NCBI GenBank assembly: GCA_964035545.1
Contig: OZ037766.1
Span: 13,754,722-13,818,721, forward strand
Source of the DNA: Bugula neritina
Lineage: Eukaryota > Animalia > Bryozoa
Length of the DNA stretch: 64,000 nt
Reading direction: 5' to 3'
The position numbers and the translations under genes were made by a program. Below are positions 13,150 to 50,337 of this stretch, piece by piece; within the stretch, counting starts at the first letter, position 1; each line of letters starts with the position of its first letter. The notes below the pieces were generated by a model, which ran no database searches, was not told the origin of the DNA, and saw only the letters and a program-made list of their open reading frames with translations.

Positions 13150-13986
13150 TTTAAAGATAAATAGCCTCAATGACAACCTTCTCAAAAATATAGAAAACTT
13201 TTATATATGAGTTTTGTACAATACCAAATGTTTTTTACAACAAAATAATACAAATTATAATGTTTTAAATTTTAGGTCACGTTTGTAACAACGATTGAAA
13301 ACGAAGTATAAAAACTGGTCAAAATAACGTCTTTGGGTTAGAGAGTTAGTAAAATCAAAAGAGATAAATTCAAAAAGCACCTCTACTAGTACTTGACTTT
13401 CATTTTAATAATAATTTTAATACTTATACAGATATTTAATTTTATCGTTATACTTATGCTGTCAATAATTATAAATGAACCAATTGGCAAATACAATGAT
13501 AAATAATTCATGATAGTTAAAATTGATCTTATAGTTATAGTTAAACGTAATCATAATGTTAATGTTATACTTACTCTTAGTCTTAGTCTAAGTCTTATAC
13601 TTATAGTTATAGTATAACTGAGTTATACTTATAGTTGTACCGTAACTGTAAGTGTAAGGGTAATAGTAATACTTATAGCTATATTTATACTTATAGTATT
13701 AGTTATTGTTATACTAATTTAAAATTATTTTGACTTTCAACTTGAACTACCACTTGGCCTTGGGTCTTGAAGTTGAACTTTGAAGTAAACCACACGTCGT
13801 CGGTCGTAGAACTAGAAATATCAGTATTATCATTACCAAATCATCATCATTATGAAATAAAACTCAAACTCATCAGTCATCATTATCATCACCGTGATGA
13901 TGATGCTGATAATCACGAAACATGAAGATATTTAGATAATCATAACGAATATGACTATGAGTATGAACTTGAAGATCACTTCCAAG

Positions 13987-14257
13987 TGTAGTAAATTGTG
14001 TAACTACTATGCGTGGGTTCCTAGCTTGTAATTATGTCTATTTATCTACACCAATAAAGTATTTAGGTAAAAGTTTCCAAGTTTATTTACTACTAATTAT
14101 ATAAAAGATACAGCACGTACACAGATTAGAGATTACATCCTCGCTTAGTTAGCGCGCTCTCTCTACTGCAAAACTACTACTAACTGAGGCCTATCACGTG
14201 ACGCACTTGGATAGGCTGAAGGAATACGGGGGACGCGCGCATTACGTCCTTACTACA
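13987..14257 (-). repeat. 3' LTR of element A
   Basis: Direct repeat of 21272-21542; TG...CA ends; AATAAA on the - strand; TCACGTGA motif. Confidence 0.97.
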
Positions 14258-14297
14258 CCGCCCCCCCCCAGCAGAAAGCCCTACTTTCTGATAACAC
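14258..14297 (-). promoter_or_regulatory. Polypurine tract and adjacent conserved hairpin, element A
   Basis: G-run on the - strand abutting the 3' LTR; CAGAAAG-ccta/c-CTTTCTG stem-loop at 14272-14290, also present in element B. Confidence 0.85.
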
Positions 14298-14614
14298 AGA
14301 TACAATAATTTCGAACATAAAATGTTATAAAACTATATAAAAAAAACCGAGAGAGCGTGTGGTACATAAAAGAAAAACATTGCTATATACAGTAGTAAGA
14401 AACATATACATACATAAAAAAAATATAACAGTAAATGTACAATGGCACCGGCGGGAGGCACTATAAGGGAATAGTTTGTAGAGGTAGAGCTGTATACTGG
14501 TAGGTTACTATATTGTTACACTGAGTAATTGTCTGTGAGCACTAGCGTGAGGAGGGTCTGTACTGGGGCACCACCTGCTGTACCATCACGGATAGGAAAA
14601 GAGGGACATCACCT

Positions 14615-15703
14615 TCAAGCACTTCCTTTCATTCGGGCTACAGAGGCAGAGAGGGCCCGGAGTTCTGATGCGGCGGCGGAGATTCTCGGTGTCAGTCTTT
14701 GCACCTCTTTCTCTAATTCTCGTATCCGCTCTTCTGCCTCGCCTAGATTCCTGGCGGGGGCAGAGTGTCGATTGGGGGATGAAGATGGCCAACTCCGCTT
14801 ACGAGACGGCCTCGGGGAGACAGGGGGGGAGGGACGCCATCGCTGTGGTATATCGATGCGTCGTAACACGACTCTTGGTATAGAGTCGGGGCGAGGCACT
14901 GTGCGTGCGGGGGGTGAGGAATGGGATATGCGGGGTTTCCTATATCCGGGTGGTTTAGGGCAGGGTCCCTGTGTGATGGTCCTGGGTGCGGGGAACTCCT
15001 GGCGCAGCCGTTCATATCGAACTGGGTCTGATATGAACGGTCGGATGAGATTAAGGAATTGTGGAAAGGAGGGTTCGTCGACTTCGAATAGGTGTCCAAT
15101 ATGGCATCCCATGGTTCGTTGGTGACGGAGGATGTAGTCCCTGTGATAACTATATTCACCACAGGGACAAAAGGTGGTGAAGTAATGTTGGGGAATATGA
15201 ACTCGGAGTCTTCGTGGGGTAGTGAAGTGAAGCTGGCATAAACGGCAGGTGGTGCATTGGTCATCTCCTTTGTGCTCTCGTATCAGTGTTTCCGTATCTG
15301 TTGTAACCCAGCATGATTGTTGTAGGAGTGCCTCCGGAAGAGTAGTGGGAACGGGTTCCTCGTTCCAAGCCATTTCTAGTGACGGCATGTCACCAGATAG
15401 AGGAGAGAGAGCGGTATCTAAAAGAGCAGAATTACTGTTAGATCGGATATGATCTTTACACCATAATTCTGATGACAACCGACTGTTACTAGTCTGAGAG
15501 TCATACATCTTTTCAGATAGCACTCGCGGGACTGAGTCGTGTCGTGTAGACTGACAGAGAGACATAGTGTCAAGCTCCAGATCTAGTAGATCGTCGGCCA
15601 TCTTTATGTTCTCGTCGCCTTTCACGTAGGACTCAGTCCCCAGTAGTTGTGATTCAATCAAGGCGATTAAATCAGAACTGACTGATGGTAGACTGGTTTC
15701 CAT
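14615..15703 (-). CDS. ORF3 of element A: C2H2 zinc finger, second atypical Cys/His finger and C-terminal coiled coil (362 aa)
   Basis: CRLCQLHFTTPRRLRVHIPQH (C-x2-C-x12-H-x3-H), then FCPCG...H...C, then heptad-like LGEAEERIRELEKEVQRL. Lies between the pol stop and the PPT; homologous to 45717-46430. Confidence 0.85.
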   Translation of the reverse strand: METSLPSVSSDLIALIESQLLGTESYVKGDENIKMADDLLDLELDTMSLCQSTRHDSVPRVLSEKMYDSQTSNSRLSSELWCKDHIRSNSNSALLDTALSPLSGDMPSLEMAWNEEPVPTTLPEALLQQSCWVTTDTETLIREHKGDDQCTTCRLCQLHFTTPRRLRVHIPQHYFTTFCPCGEYSYHRDYILRHQRTMGCHIGHLFEVDEPSFPQFLNLIRPFISDPVRYERLRQEFPAPRTITQGPCPKPPGYRKPRISHSSPPARTVPRPDSIPRVVLRRIDIPQRWRPSPPVSPRPSRKRSWPSSSPNRHSAPARNLGEAEERIRELEKEVQRLTPRISAAASELRALSASVARMKGSA

Positions 15704-15768
15704 GAGTGGAAATGTTAGCTCAGAGCAAGCTTACCTGAGAACCCGGTATTTGTAATCATACTCGGCGT

Positions 15769-18700
15769 TCAAGCTTGGATGTCCGTGGATTGAGTTTGAA
15801 TGCGTCTTCCCTTGACAATGTCAGCGTACGAAAAGACTGGGCAGCGTGGTTGTTGCGCACGGCTGGAACTATTTGCCCCGGGCGCAGTAGTTTTGTTTAC
15901 TACTCCGCCTTCGCAAAAGTTGAGATTTCCGTGGTGTTCACAACTCCCACGCTTTGCTGCCAGTCCTTCCGTACGGCGCCCAGCTAGACTTTCATAATTG
16001 CCGTTTGTAACACGGTCACATATGTAGTCTTGAAGGTATGCTGGGGGTTGTCTAGTACGCTGTCCCCGTTCCAGGGGAGGTGACGTATCAGCTGGAGAGG
16101 GAGTTGTAGCTGTTGGTTGGGGCGGCGTACTCACTGGTGGGCTATTTTGCTCCACCTGTGGTGTTTCTGGCCCGCCGTTGGTGGTGGTGTTCCCCTCTCC
16201 GCTGTTGTCTCCAGATGGAGCCCCTCCCACGGGGGGGTTTTGCACTTCCGGACGCGGATGCGGAACCGGAAGTGGTGGGGGTAGACTTGGTACTGGGGGC
16301 GGTGGGCGCACTTCCGTTGGTGGGAGTGGCGTCTCCTGCCTCACCAAGTCCTCTCCCCGCGGCACGACCATTTCGTACTCGGGTCCATGCCGTTGCCGCC
16401 CACGCGTTACTGTCTGCCTCCTGGGCTCCAACAACGGGGGGGCTGCTCCTGCTGCTCCTGGGCTAGCCCAATACGGTTTCAAGCGGGTTTCGTTCTGGAC
16501 AGAGACCTGTCCAGATCGCTCCAACTTGTACGTATGATTGGGCATAGCCTCAACTACTACGTAGGGTCCCACAAACTTAGGCTGGAGCTTAGCCGCTTGT
16601 CCTCGACGCCTACGGTAGTTGACCATCCACACCCAGTCCCCAGTTCGATAGAGAGGTGGTTCCTGAGAGTCCTCTCGCCGTACCTGCCACTGCTTCGCCC
16701 GCAGTATTTCGTGTGCGGCCCTCAGGTCCTCTATCAATTTACTGGCATACTCGTGGATGGTATAGTCTTGCTCTGGGATGTGGTATGTGAGGTGGTCAGG
16801 CACTCGCGTCTCTCGACCGAGCATCAGGAGGTTAGGGGTTTCCCCCGTACTGGTGTGTGGTGTACTACGGTAGGCCCGCATGACTTGCGGCAGTACCGTA
16901 TCCCACTCCTCCTGACCCCGGCCGAGGAGCAGACTGCGCAGTGCATCGCCCAACATGCGATTGTTGCGTTCCACCACCCCGTTGCCCTGAGGATGGTACG
17001 GGGTGGTCCTGCTTTGGTTTACTCCCCAGAGGCGGCAGAGGTCGCTCAACAGTTGGGACTGGAATTGAGCCCCCTGGTCCGAATGTATTTGCTCAGGTAG
17101 TCCAAGATAGCAGAATACATTTTGATCCAGCACCCTGGCCACTGTGGGGGCGGACGCATCTGGAATAGCCAGGGCATCCGCCCACCGTGTAAAGTGGTCG
17201 GTTAATACTAGGATCCAACTGTTTCCTCTGGGGGTGACGGGCATGGGTCCGACTAGGTCGATAGCTACCACCTGCCACGGCCTTCCAGCATATAACCTAC
17301 GCCGTCCCGCTTCACCAGGGAGACGGCCATGCTTGCTGGCCTGGCAGATTTCGCATTGTTTGACTCTACGCCGCACCTCACGCTCCATGCCGGGCCAGTA
17401 CCACCGGAGTCGTAACTTGGAGAGCACCCTGCTCGCCCCGGCGTGGGCTTGCTTGTGGGTGTCCCATACTAACTCCCGGCGTATGGCGGCTGGGCAGATC
17501 ACCCTCTTCCTGCCGTACTGGTTGTTGTGAGCAGCCACTGTGATGGTCAGCAGACCATCTGGCCCGATCCGCAGGGAGTCCCAACGTTGGCAGTACGACC
17601 GTAACTCGGTGCATCCCTGCCGCAGTTGTTCTTCACTGGGTCGTCGCCCCTCCTTTTTGGCACGATATACGTCGGCTACCACTCCAGGGAGGTCCTCCTG
17701 GAGTCTTCGTAGCTCCCTAACGTTATCAGCCAAGACAGGATTGGCACGGAGGCGTTGGATAGCCTCCGGGGGCGTAGCGGCCTTCTGTAGGAGTTGACCC
17801 TGGTCCCAGTCATACTCCGTTTCAGAGTGGTTCAGTGCTCTCAACTCGGATTTTGGAGGACCTCCGTCCCTCTTCTCGATGTTGAGGCACTGTTTACACC
17901 CCTCGTCCGGTCGCCGGCTCAGTCCATCAGCATTGCCGTGTTTCTTACCGGGTCGGTGCTCGATCCGGTAAGAAAACTCAGCTAGGACCTCGAGCCATCG
18001 GGCGACTTGGCTGGACGGTTCTGCTCTCTTACATAACCAAATCAAGGAGGCGTGGTCGGTCCGCAAGCGGAACTTCCTGCCGTATAGATAAGGTCTGAAA
18101 TGCTTCACTGACTTGATTACTGCCAGCAATTCCTTTCGGGTAGTGCAGTAATTTCGTTCAGTGGGCGAGAGAGACTTACTGTAGTAGGCCACGACTACTT
18201 CGCGGCCCTCCTGCACCTGGGACAGCACAGCGCCGACATTTTGGTCACTGGCGTCAGTATCGAGGATGTACTCCAGGGCAGGGTCTGGGTAGGCCAGGAT
18301 AGGGGCCTCCAGCAGGCGGCCTTTGAGGCAGTCGAACGCTCTCTGTTCGACGGGAGTCCACTGCCAGGTCACCCCCTTTGCGGTGAGCCGGTTTAATGGC
18401 TGCGCTACCCCCGCAAAGTCTGGTATGTATTGCCTGTAATACCCTACCAGCCCCAGGAAAGCCCGTAGCCCGGTCAAATCCTGGGGGGTTACCCAATCTT
18501 CTATAGCTCGTACCTTTTCAGGATCCGTCGCCACACCGTGACGGCCGACGATGTGCCCCAGGTACTTCACCTCTGGCTGCAAGAGAGCGCACTTGGAGGG
18601 TTTGAGCTTCAGATTGGCGCCTCGGAGTCGATCGAAGACCTCCCGCAGACGGCTGACGTGTGTCTGAAAGTCTGGGGAGATCACGATGACGTCGTCGAGG

Positions 18701-21210
18701 TATACTAGCAGTGTCTTCCAGTGGAGTCCACTGAGGACCTGTTCCATGAGCCGCTGGAACGTGGCGGGGGCAGAAGTCAGTCCGAAGGGGAGGACTTTCC
18801 ACTTCCATAAGCCGTCCCGCGTGATGAACGCCGCCTTCTCCTGGGCGTCTGGGCTGAGGGGGACCTGCCAATAGCCGCTCAACAAGTCTAGCGTACTGAA
18901 GTACTTGCTGCCGGCTAAGGCGTCCAGAGATTCGTCGATCCTGGGTAAGGGGTAGGCGTCCTGTATGGTCACGCTATTGAGCTTGCGATAATCCACACAG
19001 AACCGCCAACTGCCGTCTTTCTTTCGGACCAGAACGACCGGTGAACTCCACGCACTATGTGCTGGCTCGATGAGGCCGCGGTCCAAAAGATCCCGGACTT
19101 GTTGGCTGACCTCCTTTTCCTTCTCGGGTCCCAGCCTCCTAGTGGGCTGCCGAATAGGGGTAGTCCCTGCAGCCAGCGGTATCTCATGACGGACGGCCGT
19201 GGTCAGGCCGACGTCATGGTCCCCACTGCTGAACACGTCGCTATATTCACGTAGCAACTGAGCCATAGTCTGGCGTTCCACGTTGCCCGTGCAGCCGTTA
19301 CACGCTGCCTGGTATAGCTCTTTGACGTGTGATGGGACGGTCCCCCGCCTAACTGACGGGCTCTGTCGGGGACCTTCCGTCGCAGCTCCCAGCGACGGCC
19401 CTATATCCTCCTCCTGGATGGAGTGGAAGCGACCCAGCATGGATCCTGACGGTAATTGTACCGCTTCGGAGAAGGGGTTGACACACTGCACCAAGATCTC
19501 TCCTCGGTCAGTCAGCCGGTTTAGACTGCTGGCGAGTTGGATTCTAGTGTGCGCACCTTCGACAACCCCTAGCCCCGAGAGTTGGCTATTGTTCACTCTG
19601 CAGTGAACGGTAGCCCGGGAGCGGCCGGGTATAGTACAGTTGCGTACTACCTGCACACCTCCCGCTAGAGGACGACCGAACTTGTCGACACAGGTGAGTT
19701 CTTTGCCGCCCATTAGCATGGCTGACTTGCTAAAGTCAATATGGCACCCGTGTCTCTTCAAGAACGGCATCTCCAGTGGGCTGATGACGAAGGTTTCCTG
19801 AATGGCCTGGTCGCGGACGCGCCCAGCCAATTCTATGATACCGTAGAAAGGAATCCGTGACCCGTCAGCTAGGGTGCCCGGTTCCCCGGTATAGGGGGCT
19901 AAGGCTCCCCTCTCCTTGAGAGGGAGGGTGTCGAAGACCCGACGGCTGAGGAGATTAGTGGTACACCCGGAGTCTAGCAGGAAGGTGACAGCTTTACCGG
20001 CCACCTTCCCTGGCAAGAAGTAGCTGCCTCCGTGAGGTTGTACCCGTACTCCCCCAGCGTGCTCGGTCTCGGCCGAACGGGGCTGTGCCCGTTTGTTCCG
20101 CGGTTTGCGGGGCCGGTGAGAGTTTCCTTGCGGGGAGGCGTTCTGATCCTCCCCGATGCCCTGAGGGGCCTCGCTGGTCTGTTCCATTACTGGTAACGGA
20201 CTGAAGCGGTTGGTGAGAGGCAAAGAGAAGGGGTCTCGTGGTCGACCCGGTTGGCTGGTTCGGCGAGGTGTTTGCCATTGACGGGGGGTGTGTTGCTGGG
20301 CCCGTACGGGCTCCTGGCGACATCCACCCCGTTTTCCTCTCTGTGTGTGCCCGCGGAGCTCTGGGGGTCTCCGGGGAGGTTGTGGTTTCTGCTGCCGTTT
20401 GAATCGTGGGCCGCTCAGGTGGCGGTGTCCCTGGTTGCCGCTTTCCTTTCGTCGCATCATAGGTCTGGGGGGTTTTGCTGCCGTCTTCTTACTCTTCCTT
20501 GAGTGGTTGTGTGTTATCGTCGCCACCAGTTGTCCCAGCCTAGTCATCAAGCGGCTTATCTCCATCTCTATGGGGGGTTTAGTGGTCGTGGCAGCTGTGT
20601 GGACCGGATGGTCTGGTTCCCTAGAGGTCTGGGGAGTGGTCTCTTCCGTCTTATAGAGTCGCTCGGCTCCAGCGTAGGCTTTGTTCTCCTGGATTGCAGC
20701 CTCGATTGTGGTCACTCCCTTGGCTTGTAACTGGTGGTGGAAGTCCAAAGAGTTGAGAGACTGTACAAAAGCTTCGAACGTGTAGTGCCGTCTGTGTGTT
20801 TCTGGCAGATCGCTATACGCGGTCCGTGCCAGTCTCTGCACCAGAGTGGCGTGGTCAGAAAGCGGTGTACCTGTCTTGCGGAGTAATCCTCGCAGCCTGG
20901 ACTTGGCGACGGCAGCGGGCATGCCAAAACGGGCCCGTAGTGTAGCAATGATCCCGTTTATGCTAGGCCTCCACCCGTACGGCTTGGCTTCTCCCGTCAG
21001 TGCCATCCGTAGTTTCATAAGGGTTACTCTTGGCGGCCATCTTGTAATGGCTGCAGCTTCACGAAATTCTTGAACGAATTGTTCAATATCCTCGCGGCCT
21101 GTGAACACGGGAACCTCCAACGTGTTCCTATATACCTCCTCTCCAGCTCCGAGAGGGCCTATAATAATGTTCTGCTCACCTCCTTCCATTGAAGTTACTC
21201 CCTCGTCCAT
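15769..21210 (-). CDS. Single-frame Gag-Pol polyprotein of element A (capsid, decayed NC, protease lacking ILG, RT, RNase H, integrase)
   Basis: 1813-aa ORF: LLDSG (protease), WRFCVDYRKLN / LPFGL / YLDD (RT), DTDAS / ELLA / TDH / ADGLSR (RNase H), H..H..C..C, IDLVGP / HSDQG / VERNN (D,D-35-E integrase) and a GPY module. Confidence 0.97.
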   Translation of the reverse strand: MDEGVTSMEGGEQNIIIGPLGAGEEVYRNTLEVPVFTGREDIEQFVQEFREAAAITRWPPRVTLMKLRMALTGEAKPYGWRPSINGIIATLRARFGMPAAVAKSRLRGLLRKTGTPLSDHATLVQRLARTAYSDLPETHRRHYTFEAFVQSLNSLDFHHQLQAKGVTTIEAAIQENKAYAGAERLYKTEETTPQTSREPDHPVHTAATTTKPPIEMEISRLMTRLGQLVATITHNHSRKSKKTAAKPPRPMMRRKESGNQGHRHLSGPRFKRQQKPQPPRRPPELRGHTQRGKRGGCRQEPVRAQQHTPRQWQTPRRTSQPGRPRDPFSLPLTNRFSPLPVMEQTSEAPQGIGEDQNASPQGNSHRPRKPRNKRAQPRSAETEHAGGVRVQPHGGSYFLPGKVAGKAVTFLLDSGCTTNLLSRRVFDTLPLKERGALAPYTGEPGTLADGSRIPFYGIIELAGRVRDQAIQETFVISPLEMPFLKRHGCHIDFSKSAMLMGGKELTCVDKFGRPLAGGVQVVRNCTIPGRSRATVHCRVNNSQLSGLGVVEGAHTRIQLASSLNRLTDRGEILVQCVNPFSEAVQLPSGSMLGRFHSIQEEDIGPSLGAATEGPRQSPSVRRGTVPSHVKELYQAACNGCTGNVERQTMAQLLREYSDVFSSGDHDVGLTTAVRHEIPLAAGTTPIRQPTRRLGPEKEKEVSQQVRDLLDRGLIEPAHSAWSSPVVLVRKKDGSWRFCVDYRKLNSVTIQDAYPLPRIDESLDALAGSKYFSTLDLLSGYWQVPLSPDAQEKAAFITRDGLWKWKVLPFGLTSAPATFQRLMEQVLSGLHWKTLLVYLDDVIVISPDFQTHVSRLREVFDRLRGANLKLKPSKCALLQPEVKYLGHIVGRHGVATDPEKVRAIEDWVTPQDLTGLRAFLGLVGYYRQYIPDFAGVAQPLNRLTAKGVTWQWTPVEQRAFDCLKGRLLEAPILAYPDPALEYILDTDASDQNVGAVLSQVQEGREVVVAYYSKSLSPTERNYCTTRKELLAVIKSVKHFRPYLYGRKFRLRTDHASLIWLCKRAEPSSQVARWLEVLAEFSYRIEHRPGKKHGNADGLSRRPDEGCKQCLNIEKRDGGPPKSELRALNHSETEYDWDQGQLLQKAATPPEAIQRLRANPVLADNVRELRRLQEDLPGVVADVYRAKKEGRRPSEEQLRQGCTELRSYCQRWDSLRIGPDGLLTITVAAHNNQYGRKRVICPAAIRRELVWDTHKQAHAGASRVLSKLRLRWYWPGMEREVRRRVKQCEICQASKHGRLPGEAGRRRLYAGRPWQVVAIDLVGPMPVTPRGNSWILVLTDHFTRWADALAIPDASAPTVARVLDQNVFCYLGLPEQIHSDQGAQFQSQLLSDLCRLWGVNQSRTTPYHPQGNGVVERNNRMLGDALRSLLLGRGQEEWDTVLPQVMRAYRSTPHTSTGETPNLLMLGRETRVPDHLTYHIPEQDYTIHEYASKLIEDLRAAHEILRAKQWQVRREDSQEPPLYRTGDWVWMVNYRRRRGQAAKLQPKFVGPYVVVEAMPNHTYKLERSGQVSVQNETRLKPYWASPGAAGAAPPLLEPRRQTVTRGRQRHGPEYEMVVPRGEDLVRQETPLPPTEVRPPPPVPSLPPPLPVPHPRPEVQNPPVGGAPSGDNSGEGNTTTNGGPETPQVEQNSPPVSTPPQPTATTPSPADTSPPLERGQRTRQPPAYLQDYICDRVTNGNYESLAGRRTEGLAAKRGSCEHHGNLNFCEGGVVNKTTAPGANSSSRAQQPRCPVFSYADIVKGRRIQTQSTDIQA

Positions 21211-21252
21211 GATGTTCTAATACTTCTCATTGTTCTCATACAGTAGCTAGAA

Positions 21253-21270
21253 ATCCCACTGCTGCCACCA
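21253..21270 (-). promoter_or_regulatory. Primer-binding site complementary to the tRNA-Leu 3' end, element A
   Basis: The - strand reads TGGTGGCAGCAGTGGGAT one nt after the 5' LTR; metazoan tRNA-Leu(AAG/TAG) ends ...ATCCCACCGCTGCCA-CCA. Confidence 0.85.
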
Positions 21271-21271
21271 C

Positions 21272-21542
21272 TGTAGTAAATTGTGTAACTACTATGCGTG
21301 GGTTCCTAGCTTGTAATTATGTCTATTTATCTACACCAATAAAGTATTTAGGTAAAAGTTTCCAAGTTTATTTACTACTAATTATATAAAAGATACAGCA
21401 CGTACACAGATTAGAGATTACATCCTCGCTTAGTTAGCGCGCTCTCTCTACTGCAAAACTACTACTAACTGAGGCCTATCACGTGACGCACTTGGATAGG
21501 CTGAAGGAATACGGGGGACGCGCGCATTACGTCCTTACTACA
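21272..21542 (-). repeat. 5' LTR of element A
   Basis: Direct repeat of 13987-14257. Confidence 0.97.
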
Positions 21543-23437
21543 CAAGTTCATGATGATGACGGTGCGTCATGCTTATGATCATAATTTTAATTTTCATCAT
21601 TTATTCTAATTCAATTTCATGATCAATAAGGTTAAATCATAGTCAATAACTATAACATTAACTATAAGACTAAGTACAAGTCATAGTCACTATGACTATG
21701 CAATTGTATCAGTATCAGTAAGACTATCGCTATCATCTATCAGTATCACTATAATAGTAATACTGATAATCATACTCACTGATACTGATGGTGATACAAT
21801 TACTTATACTATTAGTATTACATGTGAATGACTATAAGTATAAGTCATAAGAGTTAGAGTAAGACTAAGTTTTCAAGTTAATTTTTTTTATACCAATAAT
21901 GATAATGTAAGTAATGCTCATCATTGTTATAATTATTATATTAAATAAATAAATGTAAGATTTTAATTTATTCATAATGACTTTAAGTCAATATAAATAT
22001 GTGTATTGGAGTTTAGACTTAATTATAATATTGATAATTATTGCAGGTCATTTCATACACATGTCATTTTTTTACCCATCATAAATTAACTAAAAAGTAT
22101 ATTTTTTTTATATCTATTTATTCTTTGATGTAAGTATCAAACTAAGACTCCCTAACTCTAAGTATTAGACTTACCCTTAATCTTGGAGTTGGTCTTGGTT
22201 TAAGTATAACTGTAAGGTTAAGGGTTGGTAAAACAATTTAACTGTGACTATATCTGTGGTTGGTTCTATAATCATAGTGTATACAGTAAAAGTATTAGTG
22301 TGAGAAAAAGGCAAATCAGTAGGATTAAAGTGATAATCTATTGGATTTTTGGACACACAGCCTATGTTTTAATTCAAAGCTTGATATTGAAGTTATTCAT
22401 AGCCATTACTCATTGCTGTCTTGCACCTTCACTTTTTCTTTGGGGTTATCAATATCATTTTCACTTTGACTTGACTCAATGATATCGAGATTGTTGTCTC
22501 ATTTAATATACTTACACTTGTAGTCTACTTATTAAAAAATCGGAAAATTAACAGCAAATTAAAGTAGTGCATGACTATATTTGATCGGCTGAAAGAATTT
22601 CATGCTAGGTATTTATCATGAAGAATGTTATATTTTTTACGAAAGTTATTTACCTTTCTGTGTAAATTATTTATTACACACTAGCATCAGTTTAGTGGTA
22701 TGGCAGGGAGTTTTTGAAAGACAATAACAATATTCCTGAAGTTAAACATGTGTAACTTGTAACTTGCATTTTGCTACAAAACTACAAATTATATGTACTT
22801 AACGCAGCATAGTTGTTTTTGATCTTTTGTGACCTCTATTTCTTTTATATACATTATATTTTAAAGCGGTTAAAAATCCATATATTTGAAGATTTATAAC
22901 AAATGTAAATCATGAGCTTCTAATTAATTTTGAGTCAACATTTGGTACACTTTTTAGGTTCTTTCAACAAACATTACGCACTTGCGTTATACACTAAACG
23001 CTCTCCATGTTTTAATAGATTTTTCCTAAAGCTAGTCTCGTAAACGTTGTATAATGTACATCATGATCACCATCAAATCTGTGGTAACTTAAGTTAGGAG
23101 CATTTGGGGTCATACTTTTTTTGTAAATTATCATATTTAAACAGTCTACTTCGGCTTTGCATGCATCTCTTATTTTATTGCTTCTGACACTCAACCAGGT
23201 CACTAATATGTATTTAATGCTAGTTAGGATTGTTATGACTCTTGGTAGATTTTTGCAGTACTTACTTAGCTTTAAACTATGCTTATATTACTGAGAACAT
23301 GCACTTTGTAGCAAGCTTTTGATGGTCTGTTTTAATTGCAAAAATAGAAGTGATATTGTAAACTCAAGACATGTTTTTTTAACTCTGCATATTTCTACTC
23401 TTATGAGTTGTAATATGTTCATAGAGTTTCTTATGTA

Positions 23438-45072: not shown

Positions 45073-45424
45073 TGTAGTAATTTGTGCAATTACTGAGCGT
45101 GAGTTATTTACTTGCGTACAGTTAGCTGGTTATTCTGTTATCAATTACTAGGGTAGCTGTCGAGTAATTATATTTATTATCCACAATAAAGCATAAACCA
45201 AACATCACATCAAATTATCCTATACAAGAGTCAACTACTAACACATGTTACTACTACAAGCCTCCGCTTACAACAACGTGGTATAATGTTAATAACCCGG
45301 GAAGTGTCACGTGAATCGGAAGCATATCTTCCGGAGCTGCTAATTGGTTGCTACATAAGAGTCTAAGTATTCCAAGAGTAGGGAGAGGGCGATTCCTGTA
45401 TTTGTACTTGCACTACTCACTACA
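45073..45424 (-). repeat. 3' LTR of element B
   Basis: Direct repeat of 49986-50337; TGTAGT...ACTACA ends. Confidence 0.97.
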
Positions 45425-45463
45425 CCGTCCCCCCCAGCAGAAAGCCCTACTTTCTGATAACAC
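45425..45463 (-). promoter_or_regulatory. Polypurine tract and conserved hairpin, element B
   Basis: ccgtcccccccagcagaaagccctactttctgataacac, nearly identical to 14258-14297. Confidence 0.85.
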
Positions 45464-45716
45464 AATAAAAAAACACATAATGAAAAACTATACAATAATC
45501 CAAAAAGAAAAACATACATAAGTAAACCCACAAAGAGTAAGAAGAGAAATAGTTAAACACGACAACATTTACATTAGAAGACAACAGGGTGATCGATCAC
45601 ACACATCTAGTCAGCTATTAAGAGAGAGGGTGCTTACCAGCACGCGGGCCAATGTCGGAGCGCTCGTCACATTCCAAACGAGTATCGCTCAACGAAGGTG
45701 CCTACCCCAGGCATTC

Positions 45717-46430
45717 TCATTGGTTGGACTCTGATTCTTGTAGCGACCGTGCTCTGTGTCGAGCCTGTCGGGCCCGTAGCCGCCTCTTCAGTCGCCCCAC
45801 TGAGTCCTTCAACTGGTATAGACCTGTCGTCGTATCCAGCAGGTCAGGGGCAAGTTGTGTGAACTCGGCTTGTAGTCTCATAAGCCGCTCTTCTACGTTA
45901 GCCAGCTGGCTAGGCCTTGGTGGGGTTGTAGTGGTCTCCGTTAGAGGGGATATTGTTGTTTCTTCTACTTCTGGGGTGTTGCTAGGGTTGACGGGGGTAG
46001 GAGGTGGGCCCTGAACCATAGGGGACTTATGGCGGGCAGATAGTAGCAGTACGTGAAACCCTGACATTAGTGCGGCCAGGGTGATAGCCTTCCTGATGAC
46101 TGGCTTGATGGCATCCAGGTATAGGGGGAAACTGTCTTCATCAACAGTGTGGTTCTCTCCGGCGAAGCAGCTTAGCTTATGTACTGTCACGGGATACGGG
46201 TAGACGTCGTGGAACCCGCAGGGACAGAAGTGGAGCAGGAAATGGGCGTCTACATGTAAACGCAGGGAGCGGTGTGACGGGCACTCCTCAAAGCAGACCT
46301 GGCAGGTTCGGTGTGGTCCACTGGGTCCCCAGGCTTCTTCAATTCTCCTCTCTGTCGTGGGTGACACCCAACGGTGTCGTCGGCGGAGCACTACAGGTAT
46401 GCCATTCTCCATTACAGGCTCTTCTTCCAT
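45717..46430 (-). CDS. ORF3 of element B: C2H2 zinc finger, second Cys/His finger and coiled coil
   Basis: CQVCFEECPSHRSLRLHVDAH, FCPCG...H...C, VDEDSFP and LANVEERLMRLQAEFTQL. Frame is open from 46523; first ATG at 46430; candidate splice acceptor ctactctttcag ends at 46484. Confidence 0.82.
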   Translation of the reverse strand: MEEEPVMENGIPVVLRRRHRWVSPTTERRIEEAWGPSGPHRTCQVCFEECPSHRSLRLHVDAHFLLHFCPCGFHDVYPYPVTVHKLSCFAGENHTVDEDSFPLYLDAIKPVIRKAITLAALMSGFHVLLLSARHKSPMVQGPPPTPVNPSNTPEVEETTISPLTETTTTPPRPSQLANVEERLMRLQAEFTQLAPDLLDTTTGLYQLKDSVGRLKRRLRARQARHRARSLQESESNQ

Positions 46431-46792
46431 AGACAGAGAGGTTGGCTGGTCCCGTGACCGGGAGGTGGTCACTCGAGTGTGATCTGAAAGAGTAGCAGTG
46501 TTAAAGATTATACACTGAGGCACCGTCGGCGTGTACAGCCTGACCGGTACTCTGTTCAGTTACACTCGTGAGATTCAGGCTAATGAATAGTTGATGGAGA
46601 ACACACTCGCTATGACAGATTATTTAAAATCAAAGTCGACGTGTATTCCCACCACTGTTTATCATTATCGAATCTCCAGCTAGCTAGTGTAGCTAAGCTG
46701 ACTGATGCAGTCTAGTTATCGTACCAAAAACATAATTAACTCACCCTTCGATCCAGAATAGTAAGACATTTTGGAATGAGAGTGGTAAATGA

Positions 46793-49051
46793 TTACTGTT
46801 TACTGGCACGTCTACTCTCGACTGCATCAACATAGGAAAAGATCGGACAGCGTGGTTGTGAAACGTGACTAGGGCTTTTCACTTCCAGCGGATGAATCTC
46901 GTGTGAGATTCCGCCGAGGCAAAAGTTGAGATTCTCGTGGTGATCACAACTCCCACGGCTCTTTGCCTGTTTTCCCATGCGAGGCCTCTCTAGACTTTTG
47001 TTACTGCCGCTTATACCGCGGTCACGTACACAGTCTCTGAGACACGCTGGAAGTTGCCTAGTGTGTGGTCCTGGTCCTATGTTGGTATCTCCTTGCGGAG
47101 CCCCTCCCACGGGGGGTTTTTGCACTTCCGGACCTGTTTCTGGTTCCGGAAGTGGTGATGATGGCAGGCTTGACGTTGGGGGCGGTGAGCGCACTTTCAA
47201 GGACGGAAGTGGCCTTTCTCGCCTCGCCAAGTCTTCCTGACGTGTCATGGAGGTGTTTCCGGCCAGGTTGACAGTCTCCGCCTGCCGAGACCTTCTCGCA
47301 CAATGCGTCTGCCGCCCCGCTTCACCAGGGAGACGGCTATGCTTGTTGGTCTGGCAGACTTTGCACCGTCTCACTCTGCGTCGGATATCCCGTTCCATGT
47401 TAGGCCAGTACCACCGGAGTTGTAGCTTGGTGACCACCCCTTGGACTCCTCCGTGAGTCTCCTCGTGGGTGTCTTGTATCAGCTTCCGGCGGATGGCAAC
47501 TGGGCAGACAACCCTCTTCCTGGCTGGCTGTCTGCTGTTGGCGGCCAAGGTCATGGTTAGCAGACCATCTGGCCCGACCCGCAGAGAGCTCCAACGTTGA
47601 CAGTACAGCCGTAACTCGGCGCATCCCTGTCGCCGTTGTGTACTACTGGGTCGTCGCCCCTCCTGTTTCGCTCGGTACACGTCGGCTACCACCCCAGGAA
47701 GGCATTCCTGGAGCTTCGGCAGCTCCCTAACGTTACCAGCCCATACAGGTTTGGCGCGGAGGCTCTGGGCAGCCTCCGGGGGCGTGTCAGCCCTCTGTTG
47801 GAGTAGCTGAGCAGGGGCGGTCCTCGCCGCCCGTGGTACCTCACGGCAGCCTGCTTTATTTAGGCGGGCTCCGTGGTCTGTGTGGCTGAACGCCTCACTG
47901 TACCCATGTGGCAACCTAGCCATAGCCTGGCGCTTCCCGTTGCCTGTGCAGCCACGCGTCCCTGGAGGAGGGGAGGCGTGGGTTGGGACGGTCCTCCGCC
48001 CTCGAGACGAGCTCTGCTGAGGACCTTCCGTCGTAGCTCCCGACGACGGCCCAATGGCTTCCTCCTGGACAGGATGGAAGCGACCCAGCATGGATCTGGG
48101 TGGTAGGTCTACTGTCTCTGAGAAGGGGTTGACACACTGCACTGAGATCTCTCCTTGTCCCGTAAGCCGGCTAAAGCTATGGGCAAGTTGGACTCTCGAG
48201 TGCGTACTTTCGACAACTCCCAACTTAGAGGTTTGGCCACCGTCTACCTTGCAGCGGACGGTAGCCCGGGAGTGGCCTGGTATAGTACAGCTCCGTACTA
48301 CCTGCACTGCTCCCGCTAGAGGACGACCAAACTTATCGACACAAGCGAGCTCCTTGTCGCCCATGATCATCGCAGATTTACTGAAATCGATGCGACAACC
48401 GTGTCGTTGTAAGAATGGCATCCCGAGGATAGCATCCTCGTTGAGCTGCCCGACGATAAACGTCTCTTGGATGGCCTGGTTACGGACGTAACCAGTTAGC
48501 TCAATAATGCCGTAGAAGGGAATGCAGGACCCGTCTGCCAGGGTGCCATGATCCCCCTCATACGGTGCCAACCTGTCCTTGACCTTAGCGCTGAGGGTGT
48601 CAAAGAACTGACGGCTAAGGAGGTTGGTGGTGCAGCCTGAGTCCAGGAGGAAGTTGGCAGGCTTGCCGGCTAGCTTTCCTGGTAGGAAGTAGCTACTTCC
48701 GTGTGGCTGCAATTGTGTGTGCCGTGGTTGCACCTCCCTCGCTGTGGGTCGAGGGGTCCACGGTTGGCGGCGACTATTGACCAGCTGCCGAGGTTGGGGC
48801 GGTACGCCTTGCGGCGCCTGTACCGTTTCCCTCGCAGGCTCTGTGGTCAACCGTCTGCCGGCTCCGTGTTGGTGCCGGAGTGGCGTAGAGGACCCAGGTG
48901 GCGAGTGGCTGGAGCCTACTCGCCGCGGGGGTCGCCACTTCACAGCATCTCCGCGCGGCGCCCAGCGGGGCGACAGACGCGCGGGCCTCCCTGGGTAATT
49001 CACAGACGGCCCGCAGGAGGTGGGAACATCTGCGGGCCGTGGTAGTTTAAC
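46793..49051 (-). CDS. Internally deleted pol frame of element B (protease, RH-IN linker, integrase HHCC domain, C-terminal tail), probably reached by a -1 frameshift
   Basis: LLDSG...AILGMPFL protease; no YLDD, no RNase H and no DDE core; THEETH...CKVC retained; open throughout and in the -1 frame relative to gag. Confidence 0.9.
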   Translation of the reverse strand, partial: VKLPRPADVPTSCGPSVNYPGRPARLSPRWAPRGDAVKWRPPRRVGSSHSPPGSSTPLRHQHGAGRRLTTEPARETVQAPQGVPPQPRQLVNSRRQPWTPRPTAREVQPRHTQLQPHGSSYFLPGKLAGKPANFLLDSGCTTNLLSRQFFDTLSAKVKDRLAPYEGDHGTLADGSCIPFYGIIELTGYVRNQAIQETFIVGQLNEDAILGMPFLQRHGCRIDFSKSAMIMGDKELACVDKFGRPLAGAVQVVRSCTIPGHSRATVRCKVDGGQTSKLGVVESTHSRVQLAHSFSRLTGQGEISVQCVNPFSETVDLPPRSMLGRFHPVQEEAIGPSSGATTEGPQQSSSRGRRTVPTHASPPPGTRGCTGNGKRQAMARLPHGYSEAFSHTDHGARLNKAGCREVPRAARTAPAQLLQQRADTPPEAAQSLRAKPVWAGNVRELPKLQECLPGVVADVYRAKQEGRRPSSTQRRQGCAELRLYCQRWSSLRVGPDGLLTMTLAANSRQPARKRVVCPVAIRRKLIQDTHEETHGGVQGVVTKLQLRWYWPNMERDIRRRVRRCKVCQTNKHSRLPGEAGRQTHCARRSRQAETVNLAGNTSMTRQEDLARRERPLPSLKVRSPPPTSSLPSSPLPEPETGPEVQKPPVGGAPQGDTNIGPGPHTRQLPACLRDCVRDRGISGSNKSLERPRMGKQAKSRGSCDHHENLNFCLGGISHEIHPLEVKSPSHVSQPRCPIFSYVDAVESRRASKQ

Positions 49052-49950
49052 CCTTGTGGGAGCTGAGGGCAGTCTTTCTGGAAATGTCCTGGCCTTCCGC
49101 ATTCCCAGCAGAAGTGGTGCCCCATGCCTGGTGATTGTACCTGCGGCCCGCTAGGCTCACGGGCAGTATCTACCTGGCTTGGGGAAGCTAATGTGGTGAC
49201 CAGTTTATCTAGCATGTCAGTCATCTGTGAGATTTTTGACGCTAGTGACATCTGGTTCACATTAGCCACCGCGGAGGGTTCCGCGTCTAATTCGGCGTGA
49301 GCAGTAGAGTGCTCCGTGGTCACCTGGCGGGAGGCCACGCGGTTGCGGTGCATATGAGTCGCCAAGAGGTAGGCTTCTCCCACCGCAAGTGCATCTTCGA
49401 CTGTGGTGACTCCCCTCGCTTGGAGTTGATGGTGGAGCCCCAAGTCGTTGATGGACTGCACGAAGGCATCATAAGTATACCTCTCACGGTGTACCGGAGG
49501 CAGATCGCGGAATGCAATCTGCGCTAGTGGGTACACCGTGGCAGCGTGCTCTTCTAGTGACGTGTGAGGATCACGCCGCATCCTCTGTAGACGGGCCCGC
49601 GCATCTATGGGAGAGATGCCAAAACGGGCCCGCAGGGAAGCAAAGATTCCGTCTATGTCAGGTCCCGCTCCGTACGGCTTAGCTTTGCCCGTCAGCGCCA
49701 TCCTGAGCTTTAGCAACGCCACCCTTGGCGGCCATTTTGCAATCTCCATCACATCCTGGAATTCTTGGATAAACTGCTCCACTGCTTCTTCGCCGGTGAA
49801 GGTGGGTGCCTTCAGCCGGTATCTATTTTCACCATGCTCTCTAAGAATTCTCACTTCTTCATCTAACACCACTGGTTCCACCGGTATATCAACATTATCT
49901 CTCTCACCTTCATTCAGTGGAATGGGTAGCTCCGTGCCGTCTTCTGCCAT
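49000..49950 (-). CDS. Gag of element B (capsid and CCHC nucleocapsid)
   Basis: Capsid region aligns with the element A N-terminus (FTG.E..EQF.QEF, WPPRV.L.KLRMALTG.AKPYG, LRARFG); CWECGRPGHFQKDC knuckle; ATG at 49950. Confidence 0.93.
   Translation of the reverse strand: MAEDGTELPIPLNEGERDNVDIPVEPVVLDEEVRILREHGENRYRLKAPTFTGEEAVEQFIQEFQDVMEIAKWPPRVALLKLRMALTGKAKPYGAGPDIDGIFASLRARFGISPIDARARLQRMRRDPHTSLEEHAATVYPLAQIAFRDLPPVHRERYTYDAFVQSINDLGLHHQLQARGVTTVEDALAVGEAYLLATHMHRNRVASRQVTTEHSTAHAELDAEPSAVANVNQMSLASKISQMTDMLDKLVTTLASPSQVDTAREPSGPQVQSPGMGHHFCWECGRPGHFQKDCPQLPQGLNYHGPQMFPPPAGRL
49006..49051 (-). promoter_or_regulatory. Putative -1 programmed ribosomal frameshift signal
   Basis: G_TTA_AAC in the gag frame (49051-49045), followed 4 nt later by a perfect 11-bp stem ACGGCCCGCAG / CTGCGGGCCGT with a 13-nt loop, inside the gag/pol overlap. 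Confidence 0.75.
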
Positions 49951-49966
49951 GACTGCTATACGCAAG

Positions 49967-49984
49967 ATCCCACCGCTGCCACCA
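49967..49984 (-). promoter_or_regulatory. Primer-binding site, tRNA-Leu, element B
   Basis: The - strand reads TGGTGGCAGCGGTGGGAT one nt after the 5' LTR. Confidence 0.88.
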
Positions 49985-49985
49985 C

Positions 49986-50337
49986 TGTAGTAATTTGTGC
50001 AATTACTGAGCGTGAGTTATTTACTTGCGTACAGTTAGCTGGTTATTCTGTTATCAATTACTAGGGTAGCTGTCGAGTAATTATATTTATTATCCACAAT
50101 AAAGCATAAACCAAACATCACATCAAATTATCCTATACAAGAGTCAACTACTAACACATGTTACTACTACAAGCCTCCGCTTACAACAACGTGGTATAAT
50201 GTTAATAACCCGGGAAGTGTCACGTGAATCGGAAGCATATCTTCCGGAGCTGCTAATTGGTTGCTACATAAGAGTCTAAGTATTCCAAGAGTAGGGAGAG
50301 GGCGATTCCTGTATTTGTACTTGCACTACTCACTACA
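49986..50337 (-). repeat. 5' LTR of element B
   Basis: Direct repeat of 45073-45424. Confidence 0.97.

What the first reader, a model, noticed from the sequence alone, without database searches (positions are those of the whole stretch)
20370..20451. Element A: zinc knuckle erased and gag-pol frameshift apparently hard-wired
Where B has CWECGRPGHFQKDCP, A has RKESGNQGHRHLSGP. Spacing and E, G, GH and P are kept, but all three Cys are replaced (two codons, AGC and GGC, are one step from TGC). From the last knuckle codon to the end of the AAAC of the slippery site, B has 24 nt and A has 25 nt. That extra base puts pol in the gag frame. A weakened GC stem (CCCCGGAG...CTCCGCGGG) remains downstream. 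Inference: A makes only Gag-Pol with a non-functional NC, and several independent changes with no stop codons point to lineage-level specialisation as an enzyme donor.
Basis: partly seen in the sequence, partly recalled or inferred. Interest (0 to 1): 0.8.

Follow-up and report, generated by a model that had tools for sequence, protein, structure and literature searches.

The report
Jumping gene that lost its zinc knuckle
A young Ty3/Gypsy retrotransposon family in this invertebrate genome makes Gag and Pol as one protein and has lost its RNA-binding zinc knuckle step by step. It still multiplies and its Gag is still under selection, so it looks like a self-sufficient knuckle-less element rather than a crippled "enzyme donor".

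Summary
Element A (window 13987-21542, minus strand) reads RKESGNQGHRHLSGP where element B reads CWECGRPGHFQKDCP. A has one 1813-codon gag-pol frame. B has a textbook -1 frameshift signal. The 25 versus 24 nt count is correct.

The loss is lineage-wide: 32 of 39 genomic copies have no Cys, 4 keep one, and 3 basal copies keep a full CCHC. The 31 distinct knuckle-less loci sit in unrelated flanks. A tree rooted on B orders these as a stepwise loss.

The fused frame is older than the knuckle loss. CCHC-bearing copies, and a metagenome relative, already have it. A close two-ORF family ("C") opens its pol frame at the codon after the knuckle, which places the fusion at the old slip site.

"Non-functional NC" and "enzyme donor" are not supported. 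Inherited substitutions in the knuckle-less family show purifying selection on the capsid-like part, the remnant with its basic flanks, and pol. At least 11 other copies keep a full 1821-1823-codon frame. The region has pI 12. B's motif-sharing helper is family C. Knuckle-less and single-ORF Gypsy elements are already known (Drosophila gypsy, Tf1/Tf2). This is a new member of a known kind, with an unusually clear fossil series.

The parts
13987..21542 (-). Element A, a complete Ty3/Gypsy LTR retrotransposon (7,556 bp) flanked by a 4-bp target duplication CTTG (21543-21546 and 13983-13986).
   Evidence: 271-bp LTRs (TG..CA) that are 100% identical, with matching flanking CTTG.
21272..21542 (-). 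A 5' LTR. The 3' LTR is 13987-14257. The PBS-like TGGTGGCAGCAGTGGGAT lies at 21270..21253. The polypurine run lies at 14258-14269.
15769..21210 (-). Single gag-pol frame of 1813 codons: capsid-like Gag, knuckle remnant, basic linker, PR, RT, RNase H, integrase and a C-terminal extension.
   Evidence: Sister copies have 1821-1823 codons. This copy alone lacks 6 protease codons.
20407..20451 (-). Zinc-knuckle remnant RKESGNQGHRHLSGP (aa 254-268). All three Cys positions are replaced and the His is kept.
20385..20391 (-). CAGAAAC, at the position matching the GTTAAAC slip site of relatives. It is read here in the gag frame, 25 nt after the last knuckle codon.
   Evidence: Family C's pol-frame homology to A starts at aa ~269.
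20350..20376 (-). Weak, bulged 8-bp stem (CCCCGGAG / CTCCGCGGG) at the place of B's frameshift stem-loop. It is probably a relic.
   Evidence: -11.6 kcal/mol, z = +1.5. for the alignment.
20026..20406 (-). Arg/Lys/Pro-rich linker (aa 269-395) between the remnant and the protease. It is homologous to the pol-frame linker of the two-ORF family C.
   Evidence: aa 236-345: pI 12, 28 K+R and 18 Pro in 110 residues. (52% identity to C's pol frame). (purifying selection).
45073..50337 (-). Element B, a non-autonomous relative (5,265 bp). The LTRs are about 352 bp, identical over the 300 nt compared and by eye over the first ~50 nt. The target duplication is ATAG. RT, RNase H and the integrase core are missing.
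49069..49110 (-). B's intact CCHC knuckle, CWECGRPGHFQKDC.
   Evidence: on the other B copies.
49006..49051 (-). B's -1 frameshift cassette: heptamer GTTAAAC (49051..49045), a 4-nt spacer and an 11-bp GC stem-loop (49040..49006).
   Evidence: The motif occurs 257 times in the genome and 0 times in the reversed control.

Best explanation
Element A belongs to a young, still-proliferating Ty3/Gypsy lineage. Its gag and pol frames were joined at the site where its relatives use a -1 ribosomal frameshift.

Every ribosome therefore makes one Gag-PR-RT-RH-IN polyprotein. Free Gag and the enzymes would be released afterwards by the element's own protease, and the Gag:Pol balance set after translation, as in Tf1/Tf2 and Ty5 (inferred).

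The fusion also puts the strongly basic Arg/Pro-rich linker into every Gag-containing molecule. In two-ORF relatives that linker lies in the pol frame. After the fusion the three zinc-binding cysteines were lost in steps: a full CCHC, then one Cys, then none.

Nucleic-acid binding and chaperoning is most likely done by the basic, probably disordered region around the remnant, as shown for Drosophila gypsy and Ty1 Gag (inferred by analogy). On this reading the lineage is autonomous.

Shown: the anatomy, the copy series, the order of events on the tree, the selection signal and the proliferation. Inferred: protease processing, NC-like activity of the basic region, and autonomy.
For: Anatomy:
- One 1813-codon frame with PR, RT, RNase H and integrase and no zf-CCHC; identical LTRs; target duplication, PBS and PPT.

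Lineage-wide state:
- 32 copies at 90% identity or more lack all three Cys, 4 copies (86-88%) keep one, and 3 copies (84-85%) keep CX2CX4HX4C. None has an indel across the 161-nt site.
- On a tree rooted with B the CCHC copies are basal. The one-Cys plus zero-Cys clade has support 100/97 and the zero-Cys clade 100/99.

Fusion first:
- L035 carries CCHC, and its frame stays open from the knuckle into RT. The other old copies change frame only at an unstable C or G run.
- Metagenome relative P0004 has CCHC followed in the same frame by the homologous linker.

Junction at the slip site:
- Family C (RT 95-96% identical to A) has a 328-codon gag frame and a 1555-1558-codon pol frame offset -1. Its pol-frame homology to A begins at A aa ~269.
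- C carries the same TTAAAC plus stem motif as B, about 1,300 nt upstream of its RT.

Still functional:
- Substitutions shared by 2 or more knuckle-less copies have nonsynonymous:synonymous ratios of 1.0 (capsid-like part, p = 2e-7), 1.17 (remnant plus basic region, p = 0.011), 0.89 (linker, p = 0.014) and 0.65 (PR-RT). The neutral expectation is about 3.1.
- Across codons 233-300, pooling the three rows by hand gives omega ~0.45.
- 22 of 39 loci keep the frame open over gag-PR-RT. At least 11 other copies have 1821-1823-codon frames.
- Flanks are unrelated except for one duplicated locus.

Basic character:
- pI 12, with 28 K+R in 110 residues. The count is unchanged from CCHC copies to zero-Cys copies.

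Precedent:
- Gypsy and Ty1 Gag lack zinc fingers but chaperone through a basic disordered region (PMC1635307, PMC4551931).
- Zero CCHC arrays is a recognised Ty3/Gypsy state (PMC2774666, PMC2577118).
- Tf1/Tf2 have a single ORF and no CCHC (PMC7175516, PMC10085805).
Against: - There are no expression, protein or particle data, so protease processing and NC-like activity are inferred.
- The 15-codon remnant alone gives no significant selection signal (7 synonymous, 11 nonsynonymous, p = 0.10).
- Purifying selection on Gag shows that Gag matters to the lineage. It does not exclude help from the knuckle-bearing Gag of the abundant C and B families.
- The window's own copy carries a private 18-nt protease deletion. 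This particular copy may not be self-sufficient.
- Only the window copy could be dated by its LTRs. The other copies were read over 3.5 kb only.
- The selection test uses simple Nei-Gojobori site counts with no correction for transition or CpG bias.
Confidence: 0.68

Rival explanations
1. A makes only Gag-Pol, its NC is dead, and the lineage has specialised as a donor of enzymes. It depends on knuckle-bearing Gag from relatives such as B or C to package RNA, forming a two-component system.
For: - B-type elements lack RT, RNase H and the integrase core in 30 of 30 copies, yet are abundant and young, so they need a donor.
- A and B share LTR termini, a near-identical PBS and a near-identical PPT.
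- A's RT is 95-96% identical to that of the C family.
- No cysteine is left in 32 copies.
Against: - The knuckle-less family has itself made at least 30 independent insertions.
- Its capsid-like Gag, and the remnant with its basic region, are under purifying selection.
- The fusion predates the knuckle loss, so the two are not one specialisation event.
- An autonomous family C with at least ~170 sites carries B's exact frameshift cassette and a B-like gag. It is the motif-sharing helper candidate for B.
- A's Gag is only 41% identical to B's, which makes co-assembly doubtful.
Confidence: 0.14
2. The gag-pol fusion made the zinc knuckle redundant. The basic linker, formerly only in the rare frameshift product, is now in every Gag molecule. 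The knuckle therefore erodes repeatedly and independently in fused relatives, but not in frameshifting ones. This is a causal refinement of the best explanation.
For: - B's Gag NC region is not basic (pI 7.1, 4 K+R in 56 residues), while its pol-frame linker is (pI 12).
- Fused relatives show different knuckle lesions: the A lineage (three Cys replaced in steps), P0003 and P0005 (second Cys is Tyr) and P0006-P0008 (knuckle deleted). P0020, whose frame state was not established, has Arg at the second Cys.
- Frameshifting types keep CCHC: the 30 B copies carry only scattered substitutions across the knuckle-to-stem stretch and nearly all keep a 338-codon gag frame (each copy's knuckle was not translated here), and P0019 has it intact.
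Against: - The sample is small. The metagenome proteins may come from dead copies or be cut by contig ends.
- Fused relatives with an intact CCHC exist (L035-L037, P0004).
- The knuckle state of family C could not be read.
- The independence of the losses is not shown on a tree.
Confidence: 0.3
3. Nothing biological: the erased knuckle and the extra base are decay of one dead copy, or an assembly error.
For: The window copy does carry one private lesion, an 18-nt protease deletion. Homopolymer runs vary in length between old copies.
Against: - The same state is found in 32 copies, and the 31 distinct loci have unrelated flanks.
- There is no gap at the site in any of the 39 copies.
- The LTRs are identical, and the deficit of nonsynonymous changes is significant.
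Confidence: 0.02

Closest known systems
Tf1/Tf2 of fission yeasts (Ty3/Gypsy, Tf1/sushi branch)
   Same: They have a single gag-pol ORF processed by the element's protease, and a Gag without a CCHC motif (PMC7175516, PMC10085805). A shows the same pair of character states.
   Different: They are fungal chromoviruses. Relatedness to A was not tested, and Pfam finds no chromodomain in A. In the yeasts the state is ancient and fixed. Here the intermediates (a full CCHC, then one Cys, then none) are still present as copies in one genome.
Drosophila gypsy and other errantiviruses; yeast Ty1 Gag
   Same: Their Gag has no zinc finger. A basic, disordered C-terminal region binds RNA and anneals the primer tRNA (PMC1635307, PMC4551931). 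"Zero CCHC arrays" is a recognised lineage marker (PMC2774666, PMC2577118). A's region is likewise basic (pI 12).
   Different: Ty1 expresses pol by a +1 frameshift (PMC7175516). From my own knowledge, Drosophila gypsy has separate gag and pol ORFs joined by a -1 frameshift. A has one frame. No chaperone assay exists for A, and no env-like gene was identified (its third ORF is a zinc-finger/coiled-coil protein that I did not study).
Two-ORF relatives in the same genome (families B and C) with a -1 frameshift of the X XXY YYZ plus stem-loop type
   Same: C's RT is 95-96% identical to A's. B shares LTR termini, PBS and PPT with A. C's pol-frame linker is homologous to A's linker, and the knuckle is homologous to B's.
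   Different: B and C keep a separate gag frame and the slip site plus stem, and B keeps the CCHC. A has lost all three features.
Non-autonomous LTR elements mobilised in trans (for example BARE2 with BARE1, Dasheng with RIRE2; from my own knowledge)
   Same: Family B lacks RT and integrase but is young and abundant, so it must borrow enzymes.
   Different: This describes B, not A. A is a possible donor, but not the one that shares B's cassette.

Membership tests
Ty3/Gypsy (Metaviridae) LTR retrotransposon | Direct LTRs with TG..CA ends, a short target-site duplication, a PBS after the 5' LTR and a polypurine tract before the 3' LTR. | tested here: met
   271-bp identical LTRs, 4-bp CTTG duplication, a TGG... 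PBS and a G-rich tract.
Ty3/Gypsy (Metaviridae) LTR retrotransposon | Pol domain order PR-RT-RNase H-integrase. | tested here: met
   Asp_protease_2 (aa 400-436), RVT_1 (728-888), RT_RNaseH (976-1079), Integrase_H2C2 (1240-1294) and rve (1310-1407).
Ty3/Gypsy (Metaviridae) LTR retrotransposon | Gag with a capsid domain. | tested here: inconclusive
   There is no Pfam gag hit. Homology to B's Gag is clear (41%, E = 9e-62), as is homology to metagenome Gag-like proteins. The nearest Atlas clusters are named retrotransposon gag, at score 0.91. No fold was predicted.
Ty3/Gypsy (Metaviridae) LTR retrotransposon | A CCHC zinc knuckle in NC. This is usual but not universal. | tested here: not met
   no Cys at the three positions in 32 copies. 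The feature is met in B and in 3 basal copies.
Elements that express pol by a -1 programmed frameshift | Pol in the -1 frame, a slippery heptamer in the overlap, and a stable downstream structure after a short spacer. | tested here: not met
   A has one frame, no in-frame heptamer, and a stem no better than shuffles. B meets the feature, and so does C for frame offset and motif.
Single-ORF, CCHC-less Ty3/Gypsy elements (the Tf1/Tf2-like character state) | One gag-pol ORF and no CCHC in Gag. | tested here: met
Single-ORF, CCHC-less Ty3/Gypsy elements (the Tf1/Tf2-like character state) | Gag released, and the Gag:Pol ratio set, after translation by the element's protease. | not testable with these tools
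   This needs protein data.
NC-like basic chaperone region (gypsy / Ty1 type) | A markedly basic, Pro-rich, low-complexity region at the Gag C-terminus. | tested here: met
   aa 236-345 have pI 12, 28 K+R and 18 Pro in 110 residues; the count is stable across the copy series.
NC-like basic chaperone region (gypsy / Ty1 type) | RNA-binding and annealing activity. | not testable with these tools
   This needs a biochemical assay.
Autonomous element | Complete coding capacity, and evidence that the lineage's own proteins are selected. | tested here: met
   The window copy itself has a private protease deletion.

The most novel reading that the evidence does not exclude
Joining gag to pol at the old slip site moved the Arg/Pro-rich linker from the rare Gag-Pol product into every Gag molecule. 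That made the zinc knuckle dispensable. The knuckle then decays repeatedly and independently in fused relatives (A lineage; P0003 and P0005; P0006-P0008) while frameshifting relatives keep it. If true, this is a rule linking the mode of pol expression to nucleocapsid architecture in retroelements.
Probability: 0.3. Interest if true: 0.55.

Novelty: new member of a known kind. Interest (0 to 1): 0.4.

Why it matters
Zinc knuckles are usually treated as essential for retroelement RNA packaging and reverse transcription. The lineages without them are old, so how the knuckle is lost is not visible in them. Here one genome keeps the whole series: two-ORF frameshifting relatives, fused copies with a full CCHC, copies with one Cys, and a prolific family with none. 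Selection is still acting on the remnant and its basic flanks.

That makes a concrete question testable with natural sequences: can a basic linker take over nucleocapsid function once it is present in every Gag molecule? The work also corrects the idea that the element is a degenerate enzyme donor. The RT-less family B shares its cassette with a separate large autonomous family.

Tried and rejected
All copy comparisons therefore rest on 3.5-kb loci, and only the window copy is LTR-dated.
2. The look-up of encoding contigs for metagenome relatives P0006 and P0019.
3. The search for related loci in metagenome contigs with the Gag alignment. 159 pattern matches were found, none confirmed.
C's knuckle state remains untested.
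5. Placing the extra base from the A-versus-B nucleotide alignment alone. MAFFT places no gap between the knuckle and the stem. Identity downstream is 29-38 of 90 in every register, with +1 only marginally best, so I rejected this as sufficient evidence and used C's pol-frame homology instead.
6. Reading the frame changes in old copies as a second, inherited frameshift site. Rejected: the C run has lengths of 6, 7, 8, 9, 10 and 11 in different copies, which is random homopolymer slippage or sequencing error.
7. Troyka retroelements (PMC12440569). Rejected: A has TG..CA ends and a 4-bp duplication.
The consensus lines that DNA alignment and align_proteins print by themselves were not used.
Full report
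WHAT IS THERE

The window is AT-rich DNA (about 33% GC) holding two GC-rich LTR retrotransposons on the minus strand. Earlier notes of this scan call the host a bryozoan. I did not test that.

Element A spans 13987-21542. It has 271-bp LTRs that are 100% identical, TG..CA ends and a 4-bp target duplication (CTTG). A TGG... primer-binding site follows the 5' LTR and a G-rich polypurine run precedes the 3' LTR.

A carries one 1813-codon frame (21210..15769). Pfam finds protease, RT, RNase H and integrase domains in it, and no zf-CCHC.

Element B spans 45073-50337. Its LTRs are identical over the 300 nt that one search compared, and its target duplication is ATAG. It has a gag frame with a Pfam zf-CCHC hit, and a pol frame offset by -1. 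RT, RNase H and the integrase core have been removed from that pol frame.

A and B are different families. Amino-acid identity is 41% in Gag, 65% in the protease region and 64% in the integrase N-terminus. They share LTR termini, a PBS differing at one base, and a similar polypurine tract.

THE OBSERVATION

It is correct. A's residues 254-268 (20451..20407) read RKESGNQGHRHLSGP, opposite B's CWECGRPGHFQKDCP.

From the last knuckle codon to the end of AAAC there are 24 nt in B (GTTAAAC at 49051..49045) and 25 nt in A (CAGAAAC at 20391..20385).

B has a canonical -1 frameshift signal: the heptamer, a 4-nt spacer and an 11-bp GC stem (centroid -22.7 kcal/mol). A has only a bulged 8-bp stem at the aligned place (-11.6 kcal/mol), and the stretch folds no better than shuffles (z = +1.5).

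IS IT ONE DAMAGED COPY OR A LINEAGE?

A 501-nt probe found 41 matches in the genome. I read 39 loci of 3.5 kb each.

- None has a gap in the 161 nt around the site, so the extra base is not an assembly error.
- Thirty-two copies at 90% identity or more have no Cys at any of the three positions. The usual form is RWESGNQGHRHLSGP; this copy and its twin have K for W.
- Four copies at 86-88% identity keep only the second Cys.
- Three copies at 84-85% identity have a complete CX2CX4HX4C.
- On a tree of the protease-to-pre-RT region rooted with B, the three CCHC copies are basal. The one-Cys and zero-Cys copies form a clade (support 100/97), and the zero-Cys copies form a clade within it (100/99). 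The cysteines were therefore lost in steps along one lineage.
- Flanks are unrelated in all copies except one pair that is the same locus duplicated. The knuckle-less form has thus inserted at least 30 times.

THE FUSED FRAME

The fused frame is older than the knuckle loss.

- The basal CCHC copy L035 keeps the knuckle frame open into RT.
- The other old copies leave that frame only at an unstable run of C (lengths 6 to 11) or of G, about 110 codons downstream. In the main family a T interrupts that run.
- A metagenome Gag relative (P0004) also has an intact CCHC followed in the same frame by the homologous linker.

A search with A's RT showed where the frames were joined. Besides the A lineage, which has 1821-1823-codon frames in at least 11 other copies, there is a large family "C". 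Its RT is 95-96% identical to A's, and its open frame is only 1555-1558 codons.

- C's pol-frame homology to A begins at A residue ~269, the first codon after the remnant.
- C has a separate 328-codon gag frame ending there, with pol offset -1.
- C carries the motif TTAAAC, 6 nt, then GGCCCGCAG about 1,301-1,304 nt upstream of its RT. I cross-checked this in 14 of 14 copies.
- That motif occurs 257 times in the genome and never in the reversed control.

So A's frame is gag-like up to residue 268 and pol-like from about 269-275. The direct A-versus-B nucleotide evidence is weak by comparison.

IS THE NC DEAD, AND IS A AN ENZYME DONOR?

The evidence points the other way.

First, selection. Among substitutions shared by two or more knuckle-less copies, and therefore passed on by transposition, the nonsynonymous:synonymous count ratios are:

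- capsid-like part: 1.0 (p = 2e-7)
- remnant plus basic region: 1.17 (p = 0.011)
- linker: 0.89 (p = 0.014)
- PR-RT: 0.65

The neutral expectation is about 3.1. Pairwise dN/dS values agree. The 15 remnant codons alone are too few to test (7 synonymous, 11 nonsynonymous, p = 0.10). Pooling the three rows for codons 233-300 by hand gives omega ~0.45.

Second, charge. Residues 236-345 have pI 12, with 28 K+R and 18 Pro in 110 residues. The basic content is unchanged from CCHC copies to zero-Cys copies.

Third, precedent. Published work shows that Gag proteins without zinc fingers (Drosophila gypsy, Ty1) carry nucleocapsid-like chaperone activity in exactly this kind of basic, disordered region (PMC1635307, PMC4551931).

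- "Zero CCHC arrays" is a recognised state of Ty3/Gypsy lineages (PMC2774666, PMC2577118).
- Tf1/Tf2 have a single ORF and no CCHC, and Ty5 has a single ORF, with the Gag:Pol balance set after translation (PMC7175516, PMC10085805).

Family B does need a donor. All 30 copies I read share the RT deletion and keep the slip site and stem largely intact. Nearly all B-type matches keep a 338-codon gag frame.

The autonomous family C shares B's frameshift cassette and has a B-like gag (59% identity at the C-terminus, with intermediate families up to 88%). C, or a relative of C, is the helper candidate that shares B's cassette. A remains only a possible one.

A MECHANISTIC LEAD

B's Gag nucleocapsid region is not basic (pI 7.1, 4 K+R in 56 residues). 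The basic linker lies in B's pol frame (pI 12).

Fusion therefore places that linker in every Gag molecule of the A lineage. Relatives with the fused linker show several different knuckle lesions:

- the second Cys replaced by Tyr in P0003 and P0005
- the whole knuckle deleted in P0006-P0008

P0020 has Arg at the second Cys, but I did not establish whether its frame is fused.

The frameshifting types I could read (B and P0019) keep CCHC. This suggests that fusion relaxed the need for the knuckle. The sample is small, the independence of the losses is not shown, and C's knuckle could not be read.

LIMITS

- There are no RNA or protein data.
- The window's own copy has a private 18-nt protease deletion that none of the other 38 copies share. 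This copy may be defective even though its family is not.

VERDICT

The element is a new member of a known kind, the single-ORF, CCHC-less Ty3/Gypsy elements. Its value is that the route to that state is preserved as copies within one genome.

Noticed in passing
window ~19762-19800 (element A protease): The 18-nt in-frame deletion that removes EDAILG from the protease is private to the window copy. All 38 other copies have the motif, including the near-identical twin on another chromosome (L002).
   Followed up: partly
G000, many places (for example the motif sites listed): A large autonomous two-ORF family "C" has a 328-codon gag and a 1555-1558-codon pol in the -1 frame. Its RT is 95-96% identical to A's. 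About two thirds of the 257 exact TTAAAC-plus-stem sites have its spacer variant TACCGC. B copies have TACCAC or TACCCC.
   Followed up: partly
A lineage versus family C; L002 versus L035: The divergence gradient is steep. A versus C is 52% identical in the linker, 75% in PR to pre-RT and 95-96% in RT. Between the main A family and its basal copies, dS is 0.42 in the capsid-like part but 0.115 in PR-RT. This suggests recombination between co-packaged families, or very uneven constraint.
   Followed up: no
loci L031-L039, about 110 codons after the knuckle (in the window copy the matching site is the NASPQG stretch of the linker): A run of C varies from 6 to 11 bases among old copies and shifts their frames. 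In the main family a T interrupts the run, and its length no longer varies.
   Followed up: partly
G000 hits (for example open frames of 853, 1770 and 1796 codons; paired hits offset by +1): Other related families appear to have a fused gag-pol frame. Four copies of one family have pol offset by +1 rather than -1, though these are possibly decayed copies. The gag-pol junction seems evolutionarily labile in this genome.
   Followed up: no
L009 and L010 (two places about 1.4 Mb apart on contig C8): These two A copies are identical, including 560 nt of flank. This is either a segmental duplication or an assembly duplication.
   Followed up: no
window 16001-20000 versus the rest: Element A is 58.5% GC in a host background of about 33% GC. 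B is also GC-rich. The composition is far from the host's.
   Followed up: no
window 14615-15703 (minus strand): A has a third ORF of 362 codons between pol and the 3' LTR, with a C2H2-like motif and a coiled-coil-like end. B has a shorter counterpart (45717-46523). Another finding of this scan covers it, and I did not study it.
   Followed up: no
window 49000-49110 versus 48700-49050 (element B): B's Gag nucleocapsid region is nearly neutral (pI 7.1). The strongly basic stretch lies in the pol frame, so it is present only in the frameshift product.
   Followed up: partly
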